Assembly (NCBI GenBank): GCA_963924565.1
Contig: OZ004615.1
Location: 5,456,001 to 5,520,000, forward strand
DNA from: Ascidiella aspersa
Taxonomy: Eukaryota
DNA: 64,000 bases
Direction of reading: 5' to 3'
The notes below the pieces were generated by a model that saw only the letters and a list, made by a program, of their open reading frames with translations, ran no database searches and was not told the DNA's origin. Below are positions 16,651 through 55,500 of the stretch, piece after piece. The position numbers and the translations under genes are program-made. Each line of letters begins with the position of its first letter. Positions within the stretch are counted from its first letter, which is position 1.

Positions 16651-25937
<9,287 letters not shown>

Positions 25938-43500: not shown

Positions 43501-46500
43501 GTTCTAGGAATAATTTTGAAGAAGTTTACCTTTTAAAGTTCCATGGGTTAAAAAAAATAATTCTCTGTAGTTTCGTATTTCCGATCATTTTCATTACTTT
43601 ATCAATGTTTCAAATTTCATTACACATAAATGACTATACACACTGCAAAAAACTCATCCTTATCTTTACATTCCCCCTATTTAAAAGCCCTGCCAATATT
43701 TACCGTCGGCCGATTGTTACGTCACAGGCACATTGGAGCCGAGTTCGGGGGGACTCTGCCCGACAGCGCGTTGAGCGCTTCCAGCGAAGCGGATGAGTGG
43801 TTCACCGCCGATCGCGGGAGGCTTAACACGGTTGCTGACGTCGTCATCCTTCCAGGTGACGTCAACAAACTGTTCAATTTTTTTAATTTTGAGAATATTA
43901 TTGAGATTTGGAAATAAATCGATAAAGAAACAAGCAGTTAATTCTTACCACATATACAACGAAATGTTGGTGTCTTGTTTTGAACTGTTGCACTGAATAT
44001 GTGAATAATAGAAATGACCTTGGTCCTTGCAAGTTTAATGTCGACCTTAATACATAATCAGTAACAGCAGAATAATTCAGCAAAGGCTAAGGTCGACATT
44101 TATCTTGCAATGGTGAAGTCGATTTTAAATATCACATATTCAGTGTAACGTTGATTATCCGAATCGACCTCCCTTGAATTTGCTAGATTGTTTGCTGTTA
44201 TTTGAACTGTAAACGATTTGTGTTTTTATTTAAAGTTTGCCTTACTTAAATAGAAGTAATGTTTGTAAATATAGAAAAAATGTGGAAGAACAATTTTGCA
44301 ATTGATAGAACAAATGTATATCGATTTTGGTTCGATACATTCTTCTAATTTCAAAATTTTAAACATTAATCTTCGGTGCATTGTGGCCATATTTGTTTAG
44401 AACTACAAAAAAAGTTAAATGACGAGCTTTCGCACGATAAAGGTCAGGTTAATTTATTAAGGTTCATGTTATATTAGATTTGGAAGTAAACTGTTTAGTT
44501 TGTTTCTTTTTTCACCAAGTAAACTGCTTAATTTGTTTCTCAGGGGACCAGGGGATATCGGTGGGTAACGGACACGGGGGCTGGCGACCCAATGGGGGTG
44601 ACACAAACCCCTGGTTGCAAGTCGATCTCCCATACCACACGGAACTCAAGGGGATCATAACACAGGTGCTTTAATTATATGGTGATTAAAATCTTTTTGT
44701 ACACGTTTAGATTTTGCATAAAATCAAAAACGGTTTACATGGGTTATAATTGGTTAGGGAATCTACGTTGTGTTATGCAAAATGATATAGATACAGAAAG
44801 TTCATCTATAGAAACAAAAAGTTCAATCAAGAGAATCAGGCGCCAAAGCTTTGCCGTTAATACTTGCGCTGTCTGACTTTTAGTTTTTCACCCGATCCGT
44901 CAGAAATTAGTGCAGTTGTAAGCAAAAAGGTCTACGACAATTAGGGCATCCAAAGGATCGAAAAGTCTGACTTTTAGACCTTGAGGTCGAACTGTGCTAC
45001 TTTGATCGGGTGCATTTTCTGTTTAAACTTAACAAAGTGTTTCTCAATCTTTTTTCGCGGCCACCCAAATACAGGGTGCGCCAGAAAAACCTACCACATT
45101 TCAAATTGTCACTGTACCAAAGCTGTAGCAGTCTAACAGGAGGTTGAATTGAAATATTGCAGCAAATAAAATACTTACAATTTGTGTTTCAGGTTTTAGA
45201 TTTAACAACTTAATAATGTTTTGTGCAATTTTGTATGTGGTAGGGTTTCTGGCGCACCCTGTTTTGGGGTGGCCGCGAAAAAAGGTTGAGAAACACTTTG
45301 TTAAGTTATAACAGAAAATGCTGCCGATCGAATTAGTGCAGTTCGACCTTAAGGTCTAAAAGTCAGACTTTTCGACTCTTTGGATGCCCTAATTGTCGTA
45401 GACCTTTTTGCTTACAACTGCACTAATTTCTGACGGATCGGGTGAAAAACGTATAGTTTACTGTATTGCGTAACATAGAACTGTATTGGCTGTGGCATCA
45501 AAACTTTTACCAAAAGTTATAAAATAAGTTGTTTTAATGCTTTGGAAGAGAATACAATTATTGGTATTTCTGGCTAACAATGTGCTTTCTATTTTGTTTG
45601 AACCTGAAAGTCTAACTCAGGGGTTCTTAACTTTTTTTACCGCGGACCCCTAAAATTTTCTTTCATCTCGCGTGGACCACTGAAGGCCAAAAAAAGGACG
45701 TCACAGTACAAATATACTTCACAAACTTGCTGATTTTGGTCCAAAAATTGTAAAAGTGAAATGGAGTCTAAATACATTTAGTGCAAAACCTTTTTATTTT
45801 TAAACAAATTGTTTTCTTTAATAAATTGATTAATGCTTAAATATACACTAATGTTTCAATTAGACCTTCATGGACCCCCTAAAACTAGTTCACGGACCCC
45901 CAAGGGGTCCATGGACCCCAGTTTAAGAACCACTGGTCTAACTAAACCTGAAACTCGTCTTTGTACTGTTATCCGATGAGCAAACCTTACTCTGTTTTCG
46001 CCTTAATTGTTTTGCTTTTTTTGTTTCTTAATTAGAAATTGTTGTCACATCTTTTCAGGGTCGTAACGGAATTGTTATTTACTTGGATCGTTCGTGGGTG
46101 ACGAGTTACAAGATTTCCTACAGCCAAGACAAGGTCGCTGACAAGTGGGAATTCATCACGGACGCAAACGGCGACCAAGTCGTAAGTAAAGCTACTCTGC
46201 CTTGGATAAAATACGCGGCAGCTGTAATATAGTGATTGGCAACCTTTTATGGCTTACGGTACCCCTCAAAAGTTAGTGCTAAATTTGCGGCACCCCTGCT
46301 AGAATTTTCGTTGAGTATTTTACTAACATGTCACTATAAATGGAACTGGAACAACACAATCAACCTAAAACGATAGGAAAATGTCATTTGATATAATGGT
46401 TTCTAATAGTGACACAAATAGGTATGAAAAAGCTTACCAGTTGAGCAAAAATCAGATTTCTAAAATTTCTTAAATACCTATAGACACCCTTGGTCATTAG

Positions 46501-49500
46501 AAATTGCACACCAGGGCGCCGCGTCACCCCGGTTTAGAACCACTGCTGTAATATATACCGGGTAGTGAATTTTATCACTGGTGTGGCCGAGGTCGTGAGT
46601 TTAAACCTCAATGCATCAGGCTGTATTTTCCAAGCCTTGTCATGCTTGCAAATTTGTTTTGGCGTTTGCCTTTTCGAACGTATCTGTTATGCTGTGATCG
46701 TTAGCCAGCACTACTTTAGCGGGGTTGGATCAGAGTATATATACATATGAATTTCATGGCTAATGTAACGGTTTTTAATGCCAAAATTGTAATACTCAGA
46801 AGCTTCTTCATGTGCAAGAATATTTTTTTTTCATTTTACAGAGATATTTCATTCTAATTTAGAAATACTTTATTAAGTGAAATGAAAAATTAAGTTGTTT
46901 ATCAGCAAATATTAATGTTTAACAGGTTTCGCGTATATCCTAATAACTTCACGCCAAACGTCAGAATGTTCCAACGGCAATTTATTTATTTCCTGTCGTC
47001 AATAATGTCAGCAATCTAATTTTCCCGTCATCGTTTTTGTGACAGATCTTCAACGGCAACGCCGACCAGAACACACAAGTGACCAACCTTTTCCCACGTC
47101 CAATCATCGCACGCCACGTCAGGTGCCACCCAGTCACGTGGTTTGACTCGCCAACTATGCGACTGGAATACGTCGGCTGCCAGGCTTGTACGTCACAGTG
47201 AAATCGAGTCTCTCAGTTAATTTAACATGAATGGGGTCGTTTAAATAATGGGTTTTGACAAATGTTCAGTTAATATTTTGAGAGTTTTCAAGTGTTCTTT
47301 GTAATGAATACCGTTTTTTTACCCTACTCTAATATTCTTTATATCGCATTCAAAAAAAAATACCAGATCTTTGTTATCTATCACTCTTACATAAAGTGGG
47401 TTTGTCCAGATTAAATATCACGTGTTTTCAAAGTTTTTTTTTGTTCCCTAATGCAATTTTAAAGTGCCGTTATCCACCAAAGATATTTCAGCATAATATG
47501 CTGTAAGGTGAACAGTGAACACATATATAAAAGATGCTTTCAGTTAAACAAAAAGATAAATATGTGTACTTTCTGTTAAAAAAATGACATTTTTCCTGTT
47601 GAAATACATTGCGTTACGAACGAGAAAAGACCAAATACGATAAGTGCAAAGAACAGCTATTTTTGTTTAACAATTCGGTTAACGATGTACAAAAGGTTTT
47701 CAATTCGTTATGGAAACTAAATGGTTCTTCTTGCCCATACAGCGTGCTTGAGAAACCTCGGTATGAACTCTGGCAACATTCCGGACACCAGTATTAGCGC
47801 CGTGTCGTCCAAGAATGGCAGGGAACCCAAACAAGCAAGACCTCCGGTCAACACCGGTGAGTAAACTGATGGACCTTGTTTAAACCACAAATAGCGTATT
47901 GTATGTAGCGACCTAACCTCTGACTACCGTGCACAATGGAAGCCTTCGACACAATAACCAAGTCAGTCGATTAAAATGCAAACAAGACAGGCTTGAAAAA
48001 CAACACAGCGGTGAGGTTCGAACTTACGATCTCCGGTTATGATAGGACAGTTGCTCAGCTACATGAGCTCAGATGAGAGCACGTCGAGAGACATTACTTG
48101 CATCATATTAGTATAAACAGCTTCATGTTGAAGAGGATCTACAGTGCAATGTTAAGTCAATGAAAAATACACATGAGTATACAGACACAAACACTGTTAT
48201 CTTTGACCAAAAACGACTTCAGAGAGGACTAGATCAAAGTTCTTGTACACGTATGTCTTCTTAAAGTGTTCACCGGAAGCCTTTGACTAATAAACCAAGT
48301 CAGTCAATTGAGATGCAAGCACGACAGTCTAGAATAACAAGCCTGTGGTGAGGTACGAACTCACGACCTCCGGTCATACCGTGCCTGTTGCTCTACCAAC
48401 TGAGCTACTCGTGCTCATAGGGGGGCAAGTCGAGAAAAAACATAGCACTGTTGCCTGAAGCGCCTGTTAGTACAAACATCAGTTGATTGAAAAACGGCCG
48501 ATGTCAGATGTCCCTCAATTGTCGTATACCCTCAACATACATTTCAAGGCGTTATTTTGCCTATTTTAGGCCGTATTCCGATAAATTTCGGATTTTTTCA
48601 GACAGGTTTAAGCCTCATTCAGATTTTCGATTTTATTCTGTCGTGGAAGTTATATGGAATTATCTATTGTTCTGATTTATATATATTGTTGCTTTGTAGG
48701 TCTTATTATGTGTTCTTATTAGAAGTCTCTGGCTGTGGTTTATGTACGTAAATTTTAACTCGTTTTCTCGTTTTCAGACGAGTGCCTTCCAACCGCATCG
48801 AACGCCGGGGAGGCTTACCGTGGATGGATTTCGAGGACCAAGAGTGGACTCGTTTGCCAGGAATGGTCGTCCCAAACTCCGCACAGACACAACTAGTCAG
48901 TATATGTCGCCAAAATTCGATTTGCTTGTTTGTAAGACAGTCTATGTTTGTGCCTGCAGACATGGGCAGCTGGACTCTCTCTTTTTTCTGCACTTTTTTG
49001 ATGTTTGCACAAAAATTAATCACAAAAAACAATAATGAAAACACAAAAATAAAAGATGCACAAAACCAATTTAACCTTGAATTTTACTAAAACATACCAA
49101 CGCAAGATATTTTAATACTTAATCACACGTTAAGATGGCCTTACTGTAAATCGAAAACAAATGTTTTTCTTGTTCGCAGCAACACAACGAAAAGAAGCAT
49201 TTTTGTCACTGTGCCTTCAATAACTTGTTTTGTGTTAGTTTGTTTTGTTCCAAACCAAGTTGTAACTCACCTTGTGTGCGACTGCTTAATCTTCGTTTGA
49301 AATATACTCATTTACGGCATCAGAGCAGAAAGTTTGTCAATCAACTAGTTATAATCCAGCAAAGATGCCGTCATAAGTTTGGTTTTAAACAAATCCATAT
49401 TTTTTCACACAAACAGCGTGCTTCATATGGTTAAACTATCCAAATACAATAGAATAAAACCATAATAGTTAATAATCATGCACAAAACTCAACCGTTTTT

Positions 49501-52500
49501 ATCGTAACGTTACTATAGTTAGTTAAAACACCAAGTTTCAAGCATTCCGGGAGGTTTAATTTCACCTAAAATTACGTATAGTTTACCACATATTCAACTT
49601 AACTTTAACATTTGTAGCCAACCGGAGAGCTACCCGCAGGCAGGCCTAAGATCGAACCACTGTCGCAACCCCAACGGGGACAGATCCACCCCCTGGTGCT
49701 ACACCATGGACCCCAACGTCGAGTGGGAGGAATGCAGCATTCCAGTTTGCCCAAGTAAGGACATTTGAGTATTATATGTTTCCTAAATTTTAGTTTGAAG
49801 GTTCAGTGATAGTTTCGGGTCCTGCTTCTCAAGCTTTTGGAATGTCCGGTATTTTGGATTTCGTTCAACTACCAATATAACTTAGGCGAAAGACGATCGT
49901 TTAATTCCGTTCAAAATGGTCATTATTGTAATTAAAAAAATTAAAATAAAATTGGACGTTCAAAATTAATATTTTCTGAGTGATACTAATATTTTTTGTT
50001 TTGTCGTTACTTTCAATTATCAACTTTAATTTAAAAAAAATTCTAGAAAACACCGCTTCGGAACGGTTTTGAGGCTAAAACCTGCATTAATTGTAGGAAT
50101 TATGTTTAGGCTTGTGCAAAGGCCCCCTTTTCACTACAAAGAGAAACAACTAACCATGCAAAAAGTGGGTTTAAATCAACATGGCGCCTAAGTTAAAATA
50201 AGACTATTTAGCATTGCAGCTAATAACGTTTTTTTGCTTCTGAACAGGTTATACACCGGCTGGTTGGTCTCCTGTCAGTGCCAGTAAAGACCAGTGGATA
50301 CAAGTTTCTTTCGATGGATTTTACAAGGTACTTGCACTCGTTAGGATTATTGTTTTGCAATTTTGTTACTATATTGTATGACTTAATATTTCCCTTCTTT
50401 AGAAGTATATCGTGTTTTGGGTCTTTTTGTTTGCCAAAGACTGTTTCACAACCTTTACCGGGTTTTAAAGATAGATTGCTGTACTTAAAAAATAAATAAA
50501 AAAGGTACTTAAAAAATAAATAAAAAAGGAAAAAATCTATTTTTCTTAAAAAATACTACTTAAAAAAACTGTGGTTGTTAACCGACGTGGAATTAATTCA
50601 TGCATTTAATATATTATGTCCATTTTATTTATTGAATATTATCCTCAACAAATATCGCTTTGTAATCCTTAAAATACCAATGTGCAGTGAGTGTATGAAA
50701 CCTTGCAAGATTTTAATCAAAACACTGTATTGTTACAGCTCTCTGGCGTCACAATGTACGGCGGCCGCTCGTCGTTTGTGACGGCATACACGATTCGCTT
50801 CAGCGACGACGCAATCAACTTCAAAACGTACAACGACCAGAACGGAGACATTCACGTGAGTGTTTCGATGCGGGTCAAAGTTCGATTTTAAAACTTGTTT
50901 CGACAAAGGCCATTGTGGGATTCCATTCTTGTTGTTTGTCAATAAACGGTGACCATTTAACCTTTAAAGTCCCGTGTTGAAAATGAATAACGATTTTTTT
51001 TTCGAAACGTTCAAAATGATACCACTTCTGTATATGCTTTAATATTCTTACTACGTCTTACTCCTTCAACTAGTATGCTCCAAACTTTACAGCAATAGAT
51101 TAGCATTATTTAGTACGAATTTATTTAATATGAGCTACGTATTAGTATTGCTTGCACCATATTGTCAAATTTAGTATAAATATTTTTCGAAACCAATCTT
51201 AATAAATCGAACCTTATAAAACTACTGCAGACGGCGACGTAACCCAATTTTTTTGTCGCGACCCATAGGTTGAGAAACACTGTTTTGGGAAGTAGCCTTC
51301 AGACAATAACCCGTCGTTTCTTTAAAATTGGAGTAAAACTGAAAACTTTATCGTATTACTTTTTGCTGAGTGATGTGACTCACGATACTATTCAAAAACA
51401 ACGCAGTAATACTAAAACAGCCTGTTAAAATTTCTTAAGGGGGTCCATATCACGATGTCCCGGCTCCTAAAGGCGCCATTGCCTTTATTTTATTCGTTTA
51501 CCTTCGCAGAACCGCAAAACGACCTAGTAACCTCAGCCCGAACATAACGCCAACACTTTACTATCGGCGAATCGACCCTTACCCCCTGCGACAATGTTAG
51601 CTTTTGCTCACCAAAGTTCCTGGTACAGGAATCGGCGCAAATATTGGGTCGTGACGCAACTGGCGCGCAATAACGTCAACATCGCGCCAGCTTTGCACCG
51701 TCCTGAAAGCCATGTTGAGCAAATAATGCATTGAATATCGGTGATATCGCTGCATACGTGGGTACCATGTTTTTGCGCTTGTCACCTTCGCAAATAGCGG
51801 ATTTCGAAACAAATGTTTGCTGTGGGAAATAGCGCCGCAATGTGTGACCTTGATACGAACCCAGCGCATGTAGTGTGTAAAATTCAACGGCAAAATAAAA
51901 AAAGTATTTGATATGTTTTACACTATAGTCAGATTATGACCAATATTTGTATATTGTTATATTGCGCGTTAAAAGTGCGTTCATTTAAGTAAGTTTGCTA
52001 CACTTTATTTTCAAAACCATCAAAATGCGCAAAACAGTGCCCAAAAAAGAATGTACTTCGGAAAATATTTTGATTGTTGACTTATACGACTGATAAATGC
52101 TACTTTATCGCAGCATGTTTATTGAGGATAACTCTTGCCTAAGTAAAAACGTTTTTTTGTCGCTTTAGAAACTTGTATTACTTCTTTGCTTAAAAAGCAG
52201 CCTGTCTGTTTTTTTTTTCAGCCTGTCACCCTTTATTTTTTGTCATTCTGTAGCGTATTTTTTATTATTTTTTTTCGTACTCTGTCCTATTTGGCAAATT
52301 TATAGGCCTACCTACCGGATACACATAACACTCTTGGCATTTCTGCGAGCTCACTTTGACTCGGTCTTAATGCCTTTGTACTCAACCCTGCAATAAATAC
52401 AAACGCTTTGTGCTGTTGTAGATATTCCGTGGCCTCAGCGCAGGCGAGGCTTCCTACCTGGACATCCTGCGAGAGCCGATCACCACCAAGCACGTGCGTC

Positions 52501-55500
52501 TTTATCCGGACCAGTGGAGTGGCGAGCCCGCCATGCAGTTCGAGCTGAACGGTTGCTATGCCGACGACCGCATCACGTGCTCAGGTTTGGCGCGTTGTTT
52601 TGTGGGTTATGACGTCACTGGTTGGTCTACTTTGGAAAAGGGCTTTCCTCTGAATATAGACTCTATGGTTACCCATCGAATGTTTCATTTGACTTTCCGG
52701 TGAAGTATTAGCCTACTTTCTTCGCTGAGCGGCGATAAAAATTATGTCGTTTGAAAAACCCATTAACTGTTTATTCCTGGTCAATGTATCAAGTAGCAAT
52801 ATGATGAAAGTTTTATTTTTCGCAATGTAGCTCTATCTCAGAAAGTGCATATATTTTACCTGTATTTCCGAGAGTTCGTCGACTTATTTAAATAAGCAGA
52901 ACGGTCCACACAGGAAAACGAATTGGGAATCCCTATAGTTCAAGCTGAGTAACAGTGCCTCTCAACCATTTGTGACTCTATAATCTTTAATAACAAACAA
53001 GATTTTCTTTGGAACACTATATACGGATCTGTTCATAAGTTTATTGATGAAAATAACGGCCCAAATAGACGTTAAAAGCGTGATAGGCATATCACTGATG
53101 ATGGCATTAGAAATTGCCGAAACGTTTGAAAATAAAGCATGTCGCTTTTAACGCGTATTTGGGCCGTTATTTTCATCATTAAAGACTTTCTTTGATTGAA
53201 TACTAATAATACGTAATAGTAATTTGCGTTAAGGATCCTTTCGCTTCTTCATTAATTACAGAACACAAGTTTGCCTACCTTCATTCGCCCAACTGTTCAT
53301 TAAAGTCTATATTGTTACACGAATGAACGTGTTAAGCTAAATAGGTGAGCTGGTAAACCGATTTATTCATTTGTCGTCGTAACAATGACCCCTTTGTCCA
53401 GATACGGGGGATCTTTGGCAAGATGAAGAGGGGGCCTACACGGTCGAGTGTCCCTCGGGCTGCGTGGAAGACCCAGAAGCCCAACCAGTTTACGGAACCG
53501 AAACCTACACCAGGGTAAGTCGAGGAATAGAAAGTTTTACCACCCAGTAAAGAAGTGTAGAGTATTTACTATTTTTCATAGTTAGTGTAGAGCAGGGGTT
53601 CTTAAACTGGGGTCCATGGACCCCTTAGGGGTCCGTGAACTAGTTTTAGGGGGTCCATGAAGGCCTAAGAACTAGTGCATACTTAAGAAGCAATTATTTT
53701 TTAAAAGAAAACACTTTAATTAAAAATTAAACGGTTTTGCACTGAATGTGTAGTTAGACTCCATTTAACTTTCACATTTTTCGGACCGAAATAAACAGAG
53801 TTCTGAAGTCTATTTGTATTGTGACGTCATATTATGACATCATTTTGGAGCATTTCTCGCCTACCGGGGTCCGTGCAAAGCAAAAAAAAATTTTAGGGGT
53901 CCGCGGTAAAAAAAGTTTAAGAACCCCTGGTGTAGAGCTACCATATTTTCAGCAACCAAAAAGAGGACATTTTTCTGCCGGCAAGTAAAACGGAAGTAGA
54001 ATTGTTATGGGTTTGATGATGTTTTACAGTTCCTTGGTAGTTGCAGGCAAAAGTTACAAAAACAAAGCAAAGAAAAATGACAAAAACAGACACAAAAACA
54101 TCAAATCAAATTTATTTTTCAGATTAAGGCCTTGAATACTTTGCGGTTCCCTTAACTTTTGCCAATAAGGAATGATTATTTTTAACGAGATCGTGAAACT
54201 GTTTACACGAAATATCATTGAAATTGTATACAACCGCCAAGACAGTAATTTTTAAGAAATTAATATTAAGTCTCGCCTAAAAGTCTTGTTGAAAGTATAA
54301 GCAACTAACTCGAAATGCAAAAAAGAGGACATTTGGGCATTTTTGAGCGTCCTCGGAGGACCATTTACTTTTCTTGGGAAAAGAGGACAAATCCGCTTAA
54401 AAGAGGACATATGGCAGGATTAAGTTAGTGGTATTTCGGTTTGGAAGTGTTTGGTTTGTGACAAGAAACTTTGAATAGAGTAGGACGGCTAGTATTTTTC
54501 TTATGAAACTGAATAGTTTGTTTGCTGTTGAAACTTTTTCCCAATTGTTGACCATTGGTTGATTTTGTTAGGTGTGCTATGATTCAGTAATTCCAGTAAC
54601 GGATGAGGTTTCACTTATTGCTCAATGTTGTAATGATTTATTGAGTGTGAATTTTTATATTTACTTGTAAAGTATATTATGGTCTAAAGACTTGACTTGA
54701 TTAGATTGAAAATAACTTAGAATTCACTTTTTTCACTTGTCCAACTTAAGAATTTAAGTCAAACTTGACTAGGTATTTGTAGGTAACCAATTGGTATAGA
54801 GCAGGGCTACTCAACTATTATTAGGAAAGGTACAATTACAAAATTTAAAATTTGCTTAGGTCTGTTATAACTCTCATGAAATAATTTACAGTCATACAAA
54901 CTGTAATACGGTATAAGTCCTTCGCTTCAACTGAGAATTCTGTCATGCCGTTACTATGCAAAGGGGTTTTCAACGAACAGCAGCAATTGTTTGCCGAGAA
55001 AACAATCATCAAATCGTTTTGCCCAGTAAATACTGAGACAGATAAGGTCCGGATTCGACATTGAAAAGGTCCGCATTCAGGCCGCGGTTCCGCCAGTTGA
55101 GTAGCCCTGTTCATATGGAGTATAGACTCATTTTATTTAAAAATAATGTCTTAATTGGTTAAGCTTATTGGGTCTTTTCGTGGTTTAGCACTCGTCTGTG
55201 TGTCGTGCTGCTGTCCACGCTGGTCGGGTCCTCAACTCCCACGGTGGACCGGTCACCGTCGAGCCAAAAGAGGGACTGGTGTCTTACGGGGGGAGCTACG
55301 CCCACGGAATCACTTCCCAGGAGTAAGTGATTGGACTGCGTTCGAAGTCCGACATTTTTTTTTTAACAAAACTGTCAGCAAAGATAAAATATAGAGTTAT
55401 CTCAACCAGGCAACAAATCAATAGATAGAAAACGCTCTTTTGGTGTAAGCGAAGTGTAAACTGACGTTTCGGCAGCAGATACCAGCTGACTTCATCAGGG

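What the first reader, a model, noticed from the sequence alone, without database searches (positions are those of the whole stretch)
47743..50327. Kringle domain inserted inside a discoidin (FA58C) domain
Seen: the second FA58C starts in exon 47743-47856 ([22 protein letters not shown]...QARP), is interrupted by a complete two-exon kringle, and resumes at 50248 (GWSP...QWIQVSF). The kringle cassette is bounded by phase-1 introns on both sides. The first FA58C has a phase-1 intron at about the same position (43855/44544) without a kringle. Inference: exon shuffling placed a kringle into a surface loop of the discoidin barrel, between the AR and W-x-P motifs. The cassette is also skippable in frame (255 nt). 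Nested domain insertions are much rarer than tandem arrangements.
Basis: partly seen in the sequence, partly recalled or inferred. Interest (0 to 1): 0.75.

Follow-up and report, generated by a model that had tools for sequence, protein, structure and literature searches.

The report
Kringle nested inside a discoidin domain
A sea-squirt-like receptor gene really does carry a complete kringle domain spliced into a loop of one of its discoidin domains, an old and conserved example of exon shuffling into the middle of another domain.

Summary
Confirmed. Exon 47743-47856 holds the first ~37 residues of a discoidin (FA58C) domain. Exons 48778-48895 and 49618-49754 encode one complete kringle (Pfam). 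Exon 50248-50327 resumes the FA58C at the G-W-x-P motif.

- **RNA:** Stranded RNA-seq of the same species label shows GT..AG junctions 47856>48778 (6 reads) and 49754>50248 (4 reads). No kringle-skipping junction reached the 3-read listing threshold.
- **Conservation:** A paralogue ~65 kb downstream has the same exon order and phases. Five database proteins also have the nested order: Clavelina lepadiformis x2, Styela clava and two unnamed. The related amphioxus protein has an uninterrupted FA58C at that place.
- **Structure:** An AlphaFold model of the Clavelina module scored pLDDT 93. It matches neuropilin b1 (Z 24.9, 148 of 154 residues, model range 1-239) and angiostatin kringle (Z 15.1, model range 38-121). 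A control with only 3 sequences folded poorly.

Best reading: a class 1-1 kringle cassette entered a phase-1 intron in the "spike 2" loop of the discoidin barrel of a tunicate multi-lectin membrane receptor about 390 My ago or earlier. It is spliced in constitutively. This is a new host-guest pair of a known mechanism, and I found no paper describing it.

The parts
43728..43855 (+). First FA58C, N-terminal exon; ends in phase 1 inside the Arg-to-Trp loop, with no kringle
   Evidence: Read. Collinear tblastn matches of P0023, P0152 and P0294. No reads were laid here.
44544..44665 (+). First FA58C, second exon (G-W-R-P ... W-L-Q-V-D-L); phase 1 in, phase 0 out
   Evidence: Read. Pfam F5_F8_type_C profile 20-53 of 127, 21.8 bits, below cut-off.
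47046..47187 (+). First FA58C, last exon; ends in phase 1
   Evidence: Read. Pfam profile 86-126 of 127, 25.9 bits. 2 RNA reads join 47187 to the next exon (table 5c).
47743..47856 (+). Second FA58C, N-terminal exon (Cys, L-G-M, S-S, A-R); ends in phase 1
   Evidence: Read. Weak match to the neuropilin-2 b1/b2 N-termini (E 0.05). RNA junction 47856>48778 in 6 reads.
47857..48777 (+). Phase-1 intron upstream of the kringle; holds high-copy tRNA-like repeats
   Evidence: GT..AG ends. Word depth in the contig runs reaches 14,700-37,200 at 48164-48551, against about 50-100 elsewhere (table 2).
48778..48895 (+). Kringle exon 1 (phase 1 in, phase 2 out)
   Evidence: Pfam Kringle 3-34 of 79, E 2.5e-8. 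RNA depth 2.83.
48896..49617 (+). Phase-2 intron inside the kringle, at the position shared with other two-exon kringles of this genome
   Evidence: The RNA junction was not listed.
49618..49754 (+). Kringle exon 2 (phase 2 in, phase 1 out)
   Evidence: Pfam Kringle 38-79 of 79, E 7.2e-15. RNA junction 49754>50248 in 4 reads.
49755..50247 (+). Phase-1 intron downstream of the kringle
   Evidence: GT..AG ends.
50248..50327 (+). Second FA58C resumes (G-W-S-P ... Q-W-I-Q-V); phase 1 in, phase 0 out
   Evidence: Read. Match to the CASPR2 discoidin domain, residues 43-61 (E 0.29). RNA junction 50327>50739 in 5 reads.
50739..50855 (+). Second FA58C, third exon
   Evidence: Read. Pfam F5_F8_type_C 46-90 of 127, 21.8 bits. 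RNA junction 50855>52422 in 5 reads.
52422..52584 (+). Second FA58C, last exon, ending with the closing Cys and the R-I-T-C-S linker to LCCL
   Evidence: Read. 54-65% identical to the paralogue and to the Clavelina protein. The 3' end is inferred from a GT donor only.
53389..55323 (+). LCCL domain in two exon pieces (within 53389-53547 and 55189-55323)
   Evidence: Pfam LCCL 15-46 of 96 (19.6 bits) and 45-87 of 96 (43 bits).

Best explanation
The window holds most of a tunicate gene for a large type-I membrane multi-lectin receptor. It has many C-type lectin domains, two discoidin/FA58C domains, LCCL and then more C-type lectin domains. Orthologues also have FN2, trefoil, one transmembrane helix and a short tail.

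In the second FA58C, a standard two-exon kringle cassette lies in a phase-1 intron. That intron splits the loop between the conserved Arg and the conserved Trp. The cassette is flanked by phase-1 introns and has an internal phase-2 intron. It is spliced into the mRNA, so the protein contains a complete kringle as an excursion from that loop.

**Shown:**
- the exons, the phases and two of the three cassette junctions;
- conservation of the nested order in a paralogue and in five database proteins;
- absence of the kringle in the related amphioxus protein.

**Inferred:**
- The cassette arrived by intronic recombination of genomic DNA before the stolidobranch/aplousobranch split, dated about 389 My ago in PMC5899321.
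- The first and last kringle cysteines pair. This brings the kringle's ends together, so the barrel can close around the insertion.
- The kringle stands at the ligand-binding end of the barrel, at the 'spike 2' loop. There it alters or extends what that discoidin domain binds.
For: **Sequence and phases:**. Pfam finds a kringle in both cassette exons.

**RNA (run X3, about 6% of the run read, 64 reads laid):**
- GT..AG junctions 47856>48778 (6 reads), 49754>50248 (4), 50327>50739 (5) and 50855>52422 (5).
- All lie on the strand expected for a + strand mRNA in a stranded library.
- None of these junctions appears in the two DNA-like contig runs X1 and X2.

**Paralogue at G000:C9:5564000-5573999:**
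- Same exon order and the same 1/2/1/0 phases.
- Non-synonymous difference is 0.31 in the kringle and 0.35 in the host FA58C. Synonymous sites are saturated at 0.68-0.78.

**Database proteins with the nested order:**
- P0023 (Styela clava), P0152 and P0295 (Clavelina lepadiformis), P0153 and P0294 (unnamed).
- In the 4 proteins a pattern could parse the kringle has 6 cysteines, an N-side linker of 7 or 8 residues and a C-side linker of 7. I read P0295 by eye with the same result.
- 3 of 3 nested modules scanned match both Kringle and F5_F8_type_C.

**Outgroup:** amphioxus P0089 has the same neighbourhood (C-type lectins, FA58C, LCCL, transmembrane helix, tail motif) with an intact FA58C and no kringle.

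**Structure of the Clavelina module:**
- AlphaFold pLDDT 93.2, pTM 0.85.
- Neuropilin-1 b1: Z 24.9, rmsd 1.4 A, 148 of 154 residues aligned, spanning model residues 1-239. Angiostatin kringle: Z 15.1 on residues 38-121.
- Foldseek TM-score normalised to the target 0.82-0.87 for FVIII C2 and neuropilin b1.

**Cassette origin:** other kringles of this genome have the same internal phase-2 intron and phase-1 3' ends. Class 1-1 modules and phase-1 introns are the rule in exon shuffling (PMC8001218, passages read).
Against: - The junction between the two kringle exons was not listed, and I could not lay reads again.
- Only one RNA run was examined, at low depth (2-5x on exons), and its tissue or stage is unknown. 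A minor skipped isoform cannot be excluded.
- The window's own spliced protein was never tested as a whole, because joining was left out by instruction. The whole-domain tests rest on orthologues 50-73% identical per exon.
- The confident model came from an alignment (A2) whose ordinary FA58C rows are misaligned around the insertion.
- The same module with a clean 3-row alignment gave pLDDT 47.8 and pTM 0.50. The relative placement of the kringle on the barrel is therefore weakly supported.
- Mapping the insertion to 'spike 2' uses my recollection of the factor V C2 sequence. It is consistent with the residue numbers in PMC11098723 but was not computed here.
- No intron data exist here for amphioxus, so the pre-insertion intron is inferred only from the first FA58C of the same gene.
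Confidence: 0.85

Rival explanations
1. The kringle is an optional cassette. A substantial share of transcripts skip both kringle exons (255 nt, in frame), giving receptor isoforms with a plain or a kringle-bearing discoidin domain.
For: Symmetric phase-1 boundaries make skipping frame-neutral in both the window gene and the paralogue. RNA sampling was shallow, with one run and about 6% of it read.
Against: No 47856>50248 junction reached the listing threshold, while inclusion junctions had 6 and 4 reads. All five database models include the kringle. The kringle is as constrained as its host.
Confidence: 0.1
2. The nested order arose otherwise than by insertion into a pre-existing intron. For example, kringle-coding DNA was inserted into an exon and flanking introns were gained later, or a FA58C-kringle-FA58C tandem suffered partial deletions.
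For: The ancestral intron is not observed directly, and no amphioxus gene structure was available. The intron of the first FA58C is in the same loop but 6 residues further along.
Against: - The cassette keeps the canonical internal phase-2 intron of this genome's kringle genes.
- Both flanks are phase 1, as the class 1-1 rule expects (PMC8001218).
- The two FA58C parts complement each other exactly, with no duplicated or missing strands in the model (148 of 154 residues of neuropilin b1 aligned). A deletion origin would rarely give that.
Confidence: 0.1
3. Artefact: the exons belong to different genes, or the locus is a decaying pseudogene, so no nested protein is made.
For: None beyond the general error rate of reading exons by eye.
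Against: Spliced reads link FA58C exon to kringle exon and kringle exon to FA58C exon. The frames are open and all 6 kringle cysteines are kept in both paralogues. Independent gene models in two named species agree.
Confidence: 0.02

Closest known systems
Class 1-1 module shuffling of kringles (plasminogen, HGF, prothrombin, apolipoprotein(a), ROR)
   Same: The cassette is a typical kringle. It matches plasminogen kringles at about 1e-22 per domain, measured on the orthologue. It is bounded by phase-1 introns and split by an internal intron, like other kringles of this genome. It fits the class 1-1 rule (PMC8001218, passages).
   Different: In the known cases kringles stand between other modules, in tandem. 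Here the recipient intron lies inside another domain, so the kringle interrupts a discoidin barrel.
Ordinary discoidin/FA58C domains (factor V/VIII C2, neuropilin b1/b2, DDR1/2, CASPR2, lactadherin)
   Same: Same fold, with Z 22-25 and rmsd 1.4-2.1 A to these structures for the orthologue model. Same N- and C-terminal cysteines and the A-R and G-W-x-P motifs.
   Different: The short loop between the conserved Arg and Trp carries an ~81-residue kringle. In factor V C2 this loop is 'spike 2', one of three membrane-binding loops (PMC11098723 passages; the mapping is recalled). No solved discoidin domain listed or 46 shows such an insert.
Mannose receptor family (MRC1, LY75/DEC-205, MRC2, PLA2R1)
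   Same: Large type-I membrane proteins with many C-type lectin domains and an FN2 domain. They have one transmembrane helix and a short tail with an F-x-N-type motif. Database names for the relatives are 'macrophage mannose receptor 1-like' and 'lymphocyte antigen 75-like'.
   Different: FA58C, LCCL, kringle and trefoil domains sit in the middle or at the end. No ricin-type N-terminal domain was reported by Pfam for P0023. It works like such a receptor at most; membership is not shown.
Classical nested extracellular domains (integrin alpha I domain in the beta-propeller; laminin L4 domain inside an EGF-like module); recalled, not tested here
   Same: A self-folding guest with adjacent ends is inserted in a loop of a host domain of an extracellular mosaic protein.
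   Different: A different host-guest pair. Here both flanking introns and the guest's own intron are still in place, so the route of insertion can still be read from the gene.

Membership tests
Kringle (PF00051) | Profile match over the whole ~79-residue domain above the curated cut-off | tested here: met
   Window exons match 3-34 of 79 (34.6 bits) and 38-79 of 79 (55.5 bits), cut-off 34.3. Orthologue modules: 3 of 3 match, best E 1.7e-27.
Kringle (PF00051) | Six conserved cysteines (three disulfides; the first pairs with the last, from established knowledge) | tested here: met
   Six Cys are present in the window cassette and the paralogue and in the 4 proteins the pattern parsed. P0295 was read by eye. 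The disulfide pairing itself was not tested.
Kringle (PF00051) | Kringle fold | tested here: met
   Orthologue model residues 38-121 against angiostatin 2doh_X: Z 15.1, rmsd 1.4 A, 81 aligned. Against plasminogen 4a5t_S: Z 14.8. This is a model of the Clavelina protein, not of the window's.
Lysine-binding kringles (plasminogen K1/K4 type) | Conserved acidic pair in the N-P-D-x-D stretch and a basic residue before the late Trp (positions recalled) | tested here: inconclusive
   The stretch after C-R-N-P varies between copies: N-G-D, D-G-E, N-S-R, D-G-R, D-G-K.
Discoidin / FA58C (PF00754) | Profile match above the cut-off | tested here: inconclusive
   Window exons taken singly score 21.8 bits at best for the second FA58C (cut-off 28.2). 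Three of its four exons gave no FA58C hit. Orthologue modules pass: 41.2 bits, and 3 of 3 match. The joined window protein was not tested.
Discoidin / FA58C (PF00754) | A single eight-stranded barrel formed by both sequence parts | tested here: met
   Neuropilin-1 b1 8pfe_A: Z 24.9, rmsd 1.4 A, 148 of 154 residues, model range 1-239. Foldseek TM-score normalised to the target 0.82-0.87. The model depends on a deep alignment; the 3-row control reached only pLDDT 47.8.
Class 1-1 exon-shuffling module | Phase-1 introns on both sides of the module | tested here: met
   Read. Both flanking junctions are seen in RNA. The same phases hold in the paralogue.
Mannose receptor family | N-terminal ricin-type domain, one FN2 domain, 8-10 C-type lectin domains, transmembrane helix and endocytic tail | tested here: not met
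   P0023 has 12 Lectin_C stretches, fn2, a transmembrane helix and a tail. No ricin-type domain is listed, and FA58C, kringle, LCCL and trefoil are extra. In the window only Lectin_C and LCCL pieces were confirmed. FN2 and the transmembrane helix were not looked for in the window.

The most novel reading that the evidence does not exclude
The kringle is not a passive passenger. It is held on short linkers of fixed length (7-8 and 7 residues in every copy) at the ligand-binding end of the discoidin barrel. There it replaces the spike-2 loop and forms, with the remaining spikes, one composite recognition surface. That would be a tunicate-specific binding module, kept for about 390 My in two paralogous endocytic-type lectin receptors, with a specificity that neither domain has alone.
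Probability: 0.3. Interest if true: 0.6.

Novelty: new variant of a known kind. Interest (0 to 1): 0.48.

Why it matters
It is a clean natural example of exon shuffling into an intron that lies inside a domain rather than between domains. The recipient intron phase, the guest's symmetric phases and the guest's own internal intron are all still readable. An uninterrupted sister domain sits in the same gene, and there is a kringle-less outgroup.

It shows that the spike-2 loop of the discoidin fold tolerates an ~81-residue disulfide-closed guest over hundreds of millions of years. That is useful to know for engineering discoidin scaffolds.

[quoted passage not shown] It does not open a long-standing question.

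Tried and rejected
**Per-exon searches.**
- Pfam on single FA58C exons was mostly blind.
- The N-terminal exon and exon 50250-50327 gave only weak PDB sequence matches (E 0.05 and 0.29).

**Protein searches that added little.**
- The search with the 245-residue module profile was swamped by multi-kringle proteins. 767 proteins had E <= 1e-8, and 0 of the 120 listed carry F5_F8_type_C. It says nothing about short orthologue fragments.
- The first region search returned 5 proteins, two of them kringle-only matches (P0151, P0154).
- No Ciona, Molgula, Oikopleura or salp protein appeared. Given the length window and the word filter, this is not evidence of absence.

**Other kringles.** The other two-exon kringles of this genome that I fetched (L002-L004) are tandem kringles without FA58C exons nearby, so the nested form is not a general habit of this genome.

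**Alignment and folding.**
- The MAFFT alignment A2 misplaced the ordinary FA58C rows around the insertion. I used it anyway.
- The clean 3-row control folded poorly.

**Paralogue pairing.** Identities hint that the window gene pairs with Clavelina P0152 (66% against 61%) and the downstream paralogue with P0295 (63% against 55%). I built no tree, because that would need joined exons.

**Papers.**
- Paper searches listed no paper whose title or abstract start deals with a kringle inside a discoidin domain.
- PMC13114784's main text has 0 occurrences of 'kringle' and 'discoidin'.
- Passages only were read of PMC11098723, PMC8001218, PMC13114784 and PMC5899321.

**Earlier notes.** The earlier scan notes near this place all concern hammerhead-ribozyme elements and did not bear on this finding.

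Full report
**What is in the sequence.**
- Exon 47743-47856 follows an AG and is followed by GTGAGT. It encodes the start of a discoidin (FA58C) domain: the opening Cys, L-G-M, the S-S motif and A-R. It ends after the first base of a codon (phase 1).
- Exon 48778-48895 (phase 1 in, phase 2 out) and exon 49618-49754 (phase 2 in, phase 1 out) add up to 255 nt.
- Exon 50248-50327 (phase 1 in, phase 0 out) begins five residues before G-W-S-P and runs through Q-W-I-Q-V.
- The domain continues in 50739-50855 and 52422-52584.

Pfam places the two middle exons on Kringle profile positions 3-34 and 38-79 of 79 (34.6 and 55.5 bits, cut-off 34.3). The FA58C exons are too short to pass singly. Of eight FA58C pieces, four gave sub-threshold F5_F8_type_C hits (17.3-25.9 bits) and four gave none.

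The first FA58C of the same gene has a phase-1 intron (43855/44544) in the same Arg-to-Trp loop. That loop is 25 residues long there, and the intron lies 12 residues after the Arg, against 6 in the second FA58C.

**Context.**
On the + strand the window carries C-type lectin exons before and after this region. An LCCL domain lies just downstream. Six of ten pieces tested gave hits: Lectin_C at 21.8-37.3 bits and LCCL at 19.6 and 43 bits. The window is G000:C9:5456001-5520000 of a 308.6-Mb assembly.

**Is it transcribed as read?**
One RNA-seq run with the same species label (X3) was laid on 47000-52800 together with two DNA-like contig runs. About 6% of X3 was read and 64 reads were laid. All exon-covering reads have the first mate on the minus strand, as expected for a + strand mRNA in a stranded library.

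| Junction (GT..AG) | Reads | Notes |
|---|---|---|
| 47856>48778 | 6 | printed as 47855>48777, cut +1 |
| 49754>50248 | 4 | |
| 50327>50739 | 5 | |
| 50855>52422 | 5 | |
| 47187>47743 | 2 | end of the first FA58C to exon 47743 |

None of these junctions is in X1 or X2. No junction was listed between the two kringle exons (48895>49618), and none for skipping (47856>50248). The listing needs 3 reads. Both kringle exons have depth about 2.8, like their neighbours. So both FA58C-kringle junctions are shown, the inner kringle junction is not, and skipping was not seen at this shallow depth.

**Conservation within the genome.**
A Kringle search of the whole assembly gave 57 matches. One two-exon pair lies about 65 kb downstream, and the N-terminal FA58C exon has a 50%-identical match just upstream of that pair. 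The fetched locus (L001) holds the same series in the same order: four exons of a first FA58C, the N-terminal exon of a second FA58C, kringle exons 1 and 2, and three further FA58C exons. Identity is 49-59% per exon in the second FA58C and its kringle, and 74-76% in the last exon of the first FA58C. The intron phases are the same 1/2/1/0.

Synonymous sites between the two copies are saturated (0.68-0.78). Non-synonymous difference is 0.31 in the kringle and 0.35 in the host FA58C. The guest is therefore at least as constrained as the host.

Three other loci with two-exon kringles are tandem kringles without FA58C exons. They share the internal phase-2 intron at the same position and phase-1 3' ends.

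**Relatives elsewhere.**
A profile of the last FA58C exon (window plus paralogue, alignment A1) was run against 1.84 billion representatives. It gave 320 proteins at E <= 0.001, of which 150 were listed. I scanned three long ones with Pfam.
- **P0023** (2497 aa, Styela clava LOC120344952) has 12 Lectin_C stretches, two F5_F8_type_C, Kringle at 961-1036, LCCL, fn2 and Trefoil.
- **P0089** (2541 aa, amphioxus, 'lymphocyte antigen 75-like' or 'MRC1' in its cluster) has Lectin_C, a SUEL lectin, F5_F8_type_C, LCCL and no kringle. Its F5_F8_type_C at 1001-1133 matches profile positions 2-127, so it is uninterrupted.
- **P0041** is unrelated (FA58C plus a papain-like protease).

Two region searches added four more proteins: P0152 and P0295 (Clavelina lepadiformis, two genes), P0153 and P0294 (unnamed sources). 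They also found a teleost-labelled protein, P0296, with the amphioxus-like set of domains and no kringle.

All five kringle-bearing proteins are collinear with the window's exons, and their sequences show FA58C start, kringle and FA58C remainder in that order. In the four a pattern could parse, the kringle has six cysteines. The linker from the conserved Arg is 7 residues (8 in one), and the linker to the conserved Trp is 7. P0295 reads the same by eye. All three modules scanned match both Kringle and F5_F8_type_C.

Styela is a stolidobranch and Clavelina an aplousobranch. That split is dated 389 +/- 32 My in PMC5899321 (passages read). The best matches to the window are the Clavelina proteins, at 64-73% per exon. 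I therefore take the genome for a tunicate; I did not try to name it.

The full-length relatives have a signal peptide (P0023, P0153, P0089), a single transmembrane helix near the C-terminus and a ~45-residue tail. The tail carries a shared G-F-D/E-N motif, which is F-D-N-A-L-Y in amphioxus.

**Do the two halves make one domain?**
The 245-residue module of Clavelina P0152 was folded with a 32-row alignment (A2) made of three kinds of rows:
- the three nested modules;
- seven ordinary FA58C domains and ten whole kringles of this genome;
- the window's and the paralogue's exons as separate rows.

The result was mean pLDDT 93.2 and pTM 0.85.
- VIA-align against 48,161 chains put neuropilin-1 b1 first: Z 24.9, rmsd 1.4 A, 148 of 154 residues, model range 1-239.
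- Factor V/VIII C2, CASPR2, DDR1 and DDR2 followed at Z 20-24.
- The best kringle match was angiostatin: Z 15.1, rmsd 1.4 A, 81 residues, model range 38-121.
- Foldseek agreed, with TM-score normalised to the target 0.82-0.87 across 243-247 columns.
- By sequence, module residues 40-127 match each plasminogen kringle at about 1e-22.

Two cautions apply. MAFFT misaligned the ordinary FA58C rows around the insertion in A2. The same module with only the three nested rows gave pLDDT 47.8 and pTM 0.50. So the fold of each domain is well supported. The completeness of the barrel is supported by one model. The orientation of the kringle on the barrel is only suggested.

**Where on the barrel?**
The insertion lies in the short loop between the conserved Arg and the conserved Trp. 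PMC11098723 (passages read) describes three membrane-binding loops of factor V C2, spikes 1-3. It describes a pocket lined by K23, Q48 and S78, with Q48 equivalent to factor VIII R2220. From my recollection of those sequences, Q48 directly follows the conserved Trp, so the Arg-to-Trp loop is spike 2. This mapping is recalled and consistent with the paper's numbers; it was not computed here.

If it holds, the kringle stands at the ligand-binding end of the barrel. The residues after C-R-N-P include the acidic pair in lysine-binding kringles (recalled). They vary between copies, so a conserved lysine-binding pocket is doubtful.

**How it most likely arose and works.**
- **Shown:** a class 1-1, two-exon kringle sits in a phase-1 intron of an FA58C. 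It is spliced in, and it is conserved in two paralogues and across distant ascidians. A related amphioxus receptor has an intact FA58C in the same place.
- **Inferred origin:** genomic (not cDNA-mediated) exon shuffling into a pre-existing phase-1 intron of the spike-2 loop, as the class 1-1 rule predicts (PMC8001218, passages). This happened before the stolidobranch/aplousobranch split.
- **Inferred tolerance:** the insertion is tolerated because the first and last cysteines of a kringle pair (established knowledge) and bring its ends together.
- **Inferred function:** the fixed short linkers suggest a rigid mount that changes or extends what this discoidin domain binds in a mannose-receptor-like endocytic lectin receptor.

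**Comparison and novelty.**
The mechanism (class 1-1 shuffling) and both folds are well known, and domain-in-domain architectures are common overall. One survey found them in 20.23% of multidomain proteins, and its main text names neither kringle nor discoidin (PMC13114784). Public gene models already contain this architecture under automatic names. Five literature searches listed no paper about it.

I class it as a new variant of a known kind. It is a new host-guest pair with an unusually legible genomic record.

**Verdict.**
Interest is moderate (0.48).

Noticed in passing
G000:C9:5564000-5573999 (locus L001), about 65 kb downstream of the finding: A tandem paralogue of the whole FA58C / FA58C-with-kringle block, with identical intron phases and 49-76% exon identity. 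Clavelina also has two such genes (P0152, P0295), and identities hint that the duplication is older than the split from Clavelina.
   Followed up: partly
window 47960-48720 and 50880-51460: Intronic high-copy repeats. Word depth in the DNA-like contig runs rises from about 50-100 to 14,700-37,200 at 48164-48551, and to 660-1,660 at 50880-51461. The first stretch looks tRNA-derived by eye. A few RNA reads with unrelated flanks land there.
   Followed up: no
window 43728-44665: The first FA58C has an unusually long Arg-to-Trp loop (25 residues, against 12 in the second FA58C without its kringle) at the place where the second FA58C took up the kringle. The phase-1 intron lies inside this extension.
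   Followed up: partly
G000:C2:23449147-23451903 and G000:C2:26419258-26423443: Two long open frames (1786 and 1482 aa) hold six to seven whole kringles each without introns, unlike the two-exon kringles elsewhere in the genome.
   Followed up: no
proteins P0023, P0152, P0153, P0089 (C-termini): The short cytoplasmic tail keeps a G-F-D/E-N motif from amphioxus to ascidians. It reads F-D-N-A-L-Y in amphioxus, reminiscent of the endocytosis motif of mannose-receptor-family tails (recalled).
   Followed up: no
protein P0296: A record labelled as a teleost (Genypterus blacodes) has the amphioxus-like domain set (SUEL lectin, FA58C, LCCL, C-type lectins) and no kringle, at 32% identity. It may be a vertebrate relative or a mislabelled sequence.
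   Followed up: no
window 18758-23500 (+ strand): Exon-like open pieces upstream resemble deoxyhypusine synthase by eye. Earlier notes of the scan also speak of DHPS introns there, with hammerhead-ribozyme elements.
   Followed up: no
window 47096, 47759, 50769: The RNA run differs from the assembly at several exon positions in all covering reads (3 of 3, 4 of 4 and 9 of 9 reads). One contig run shares these differences, so they are probably strain or allele differences rather than editing.
   Followed up: no
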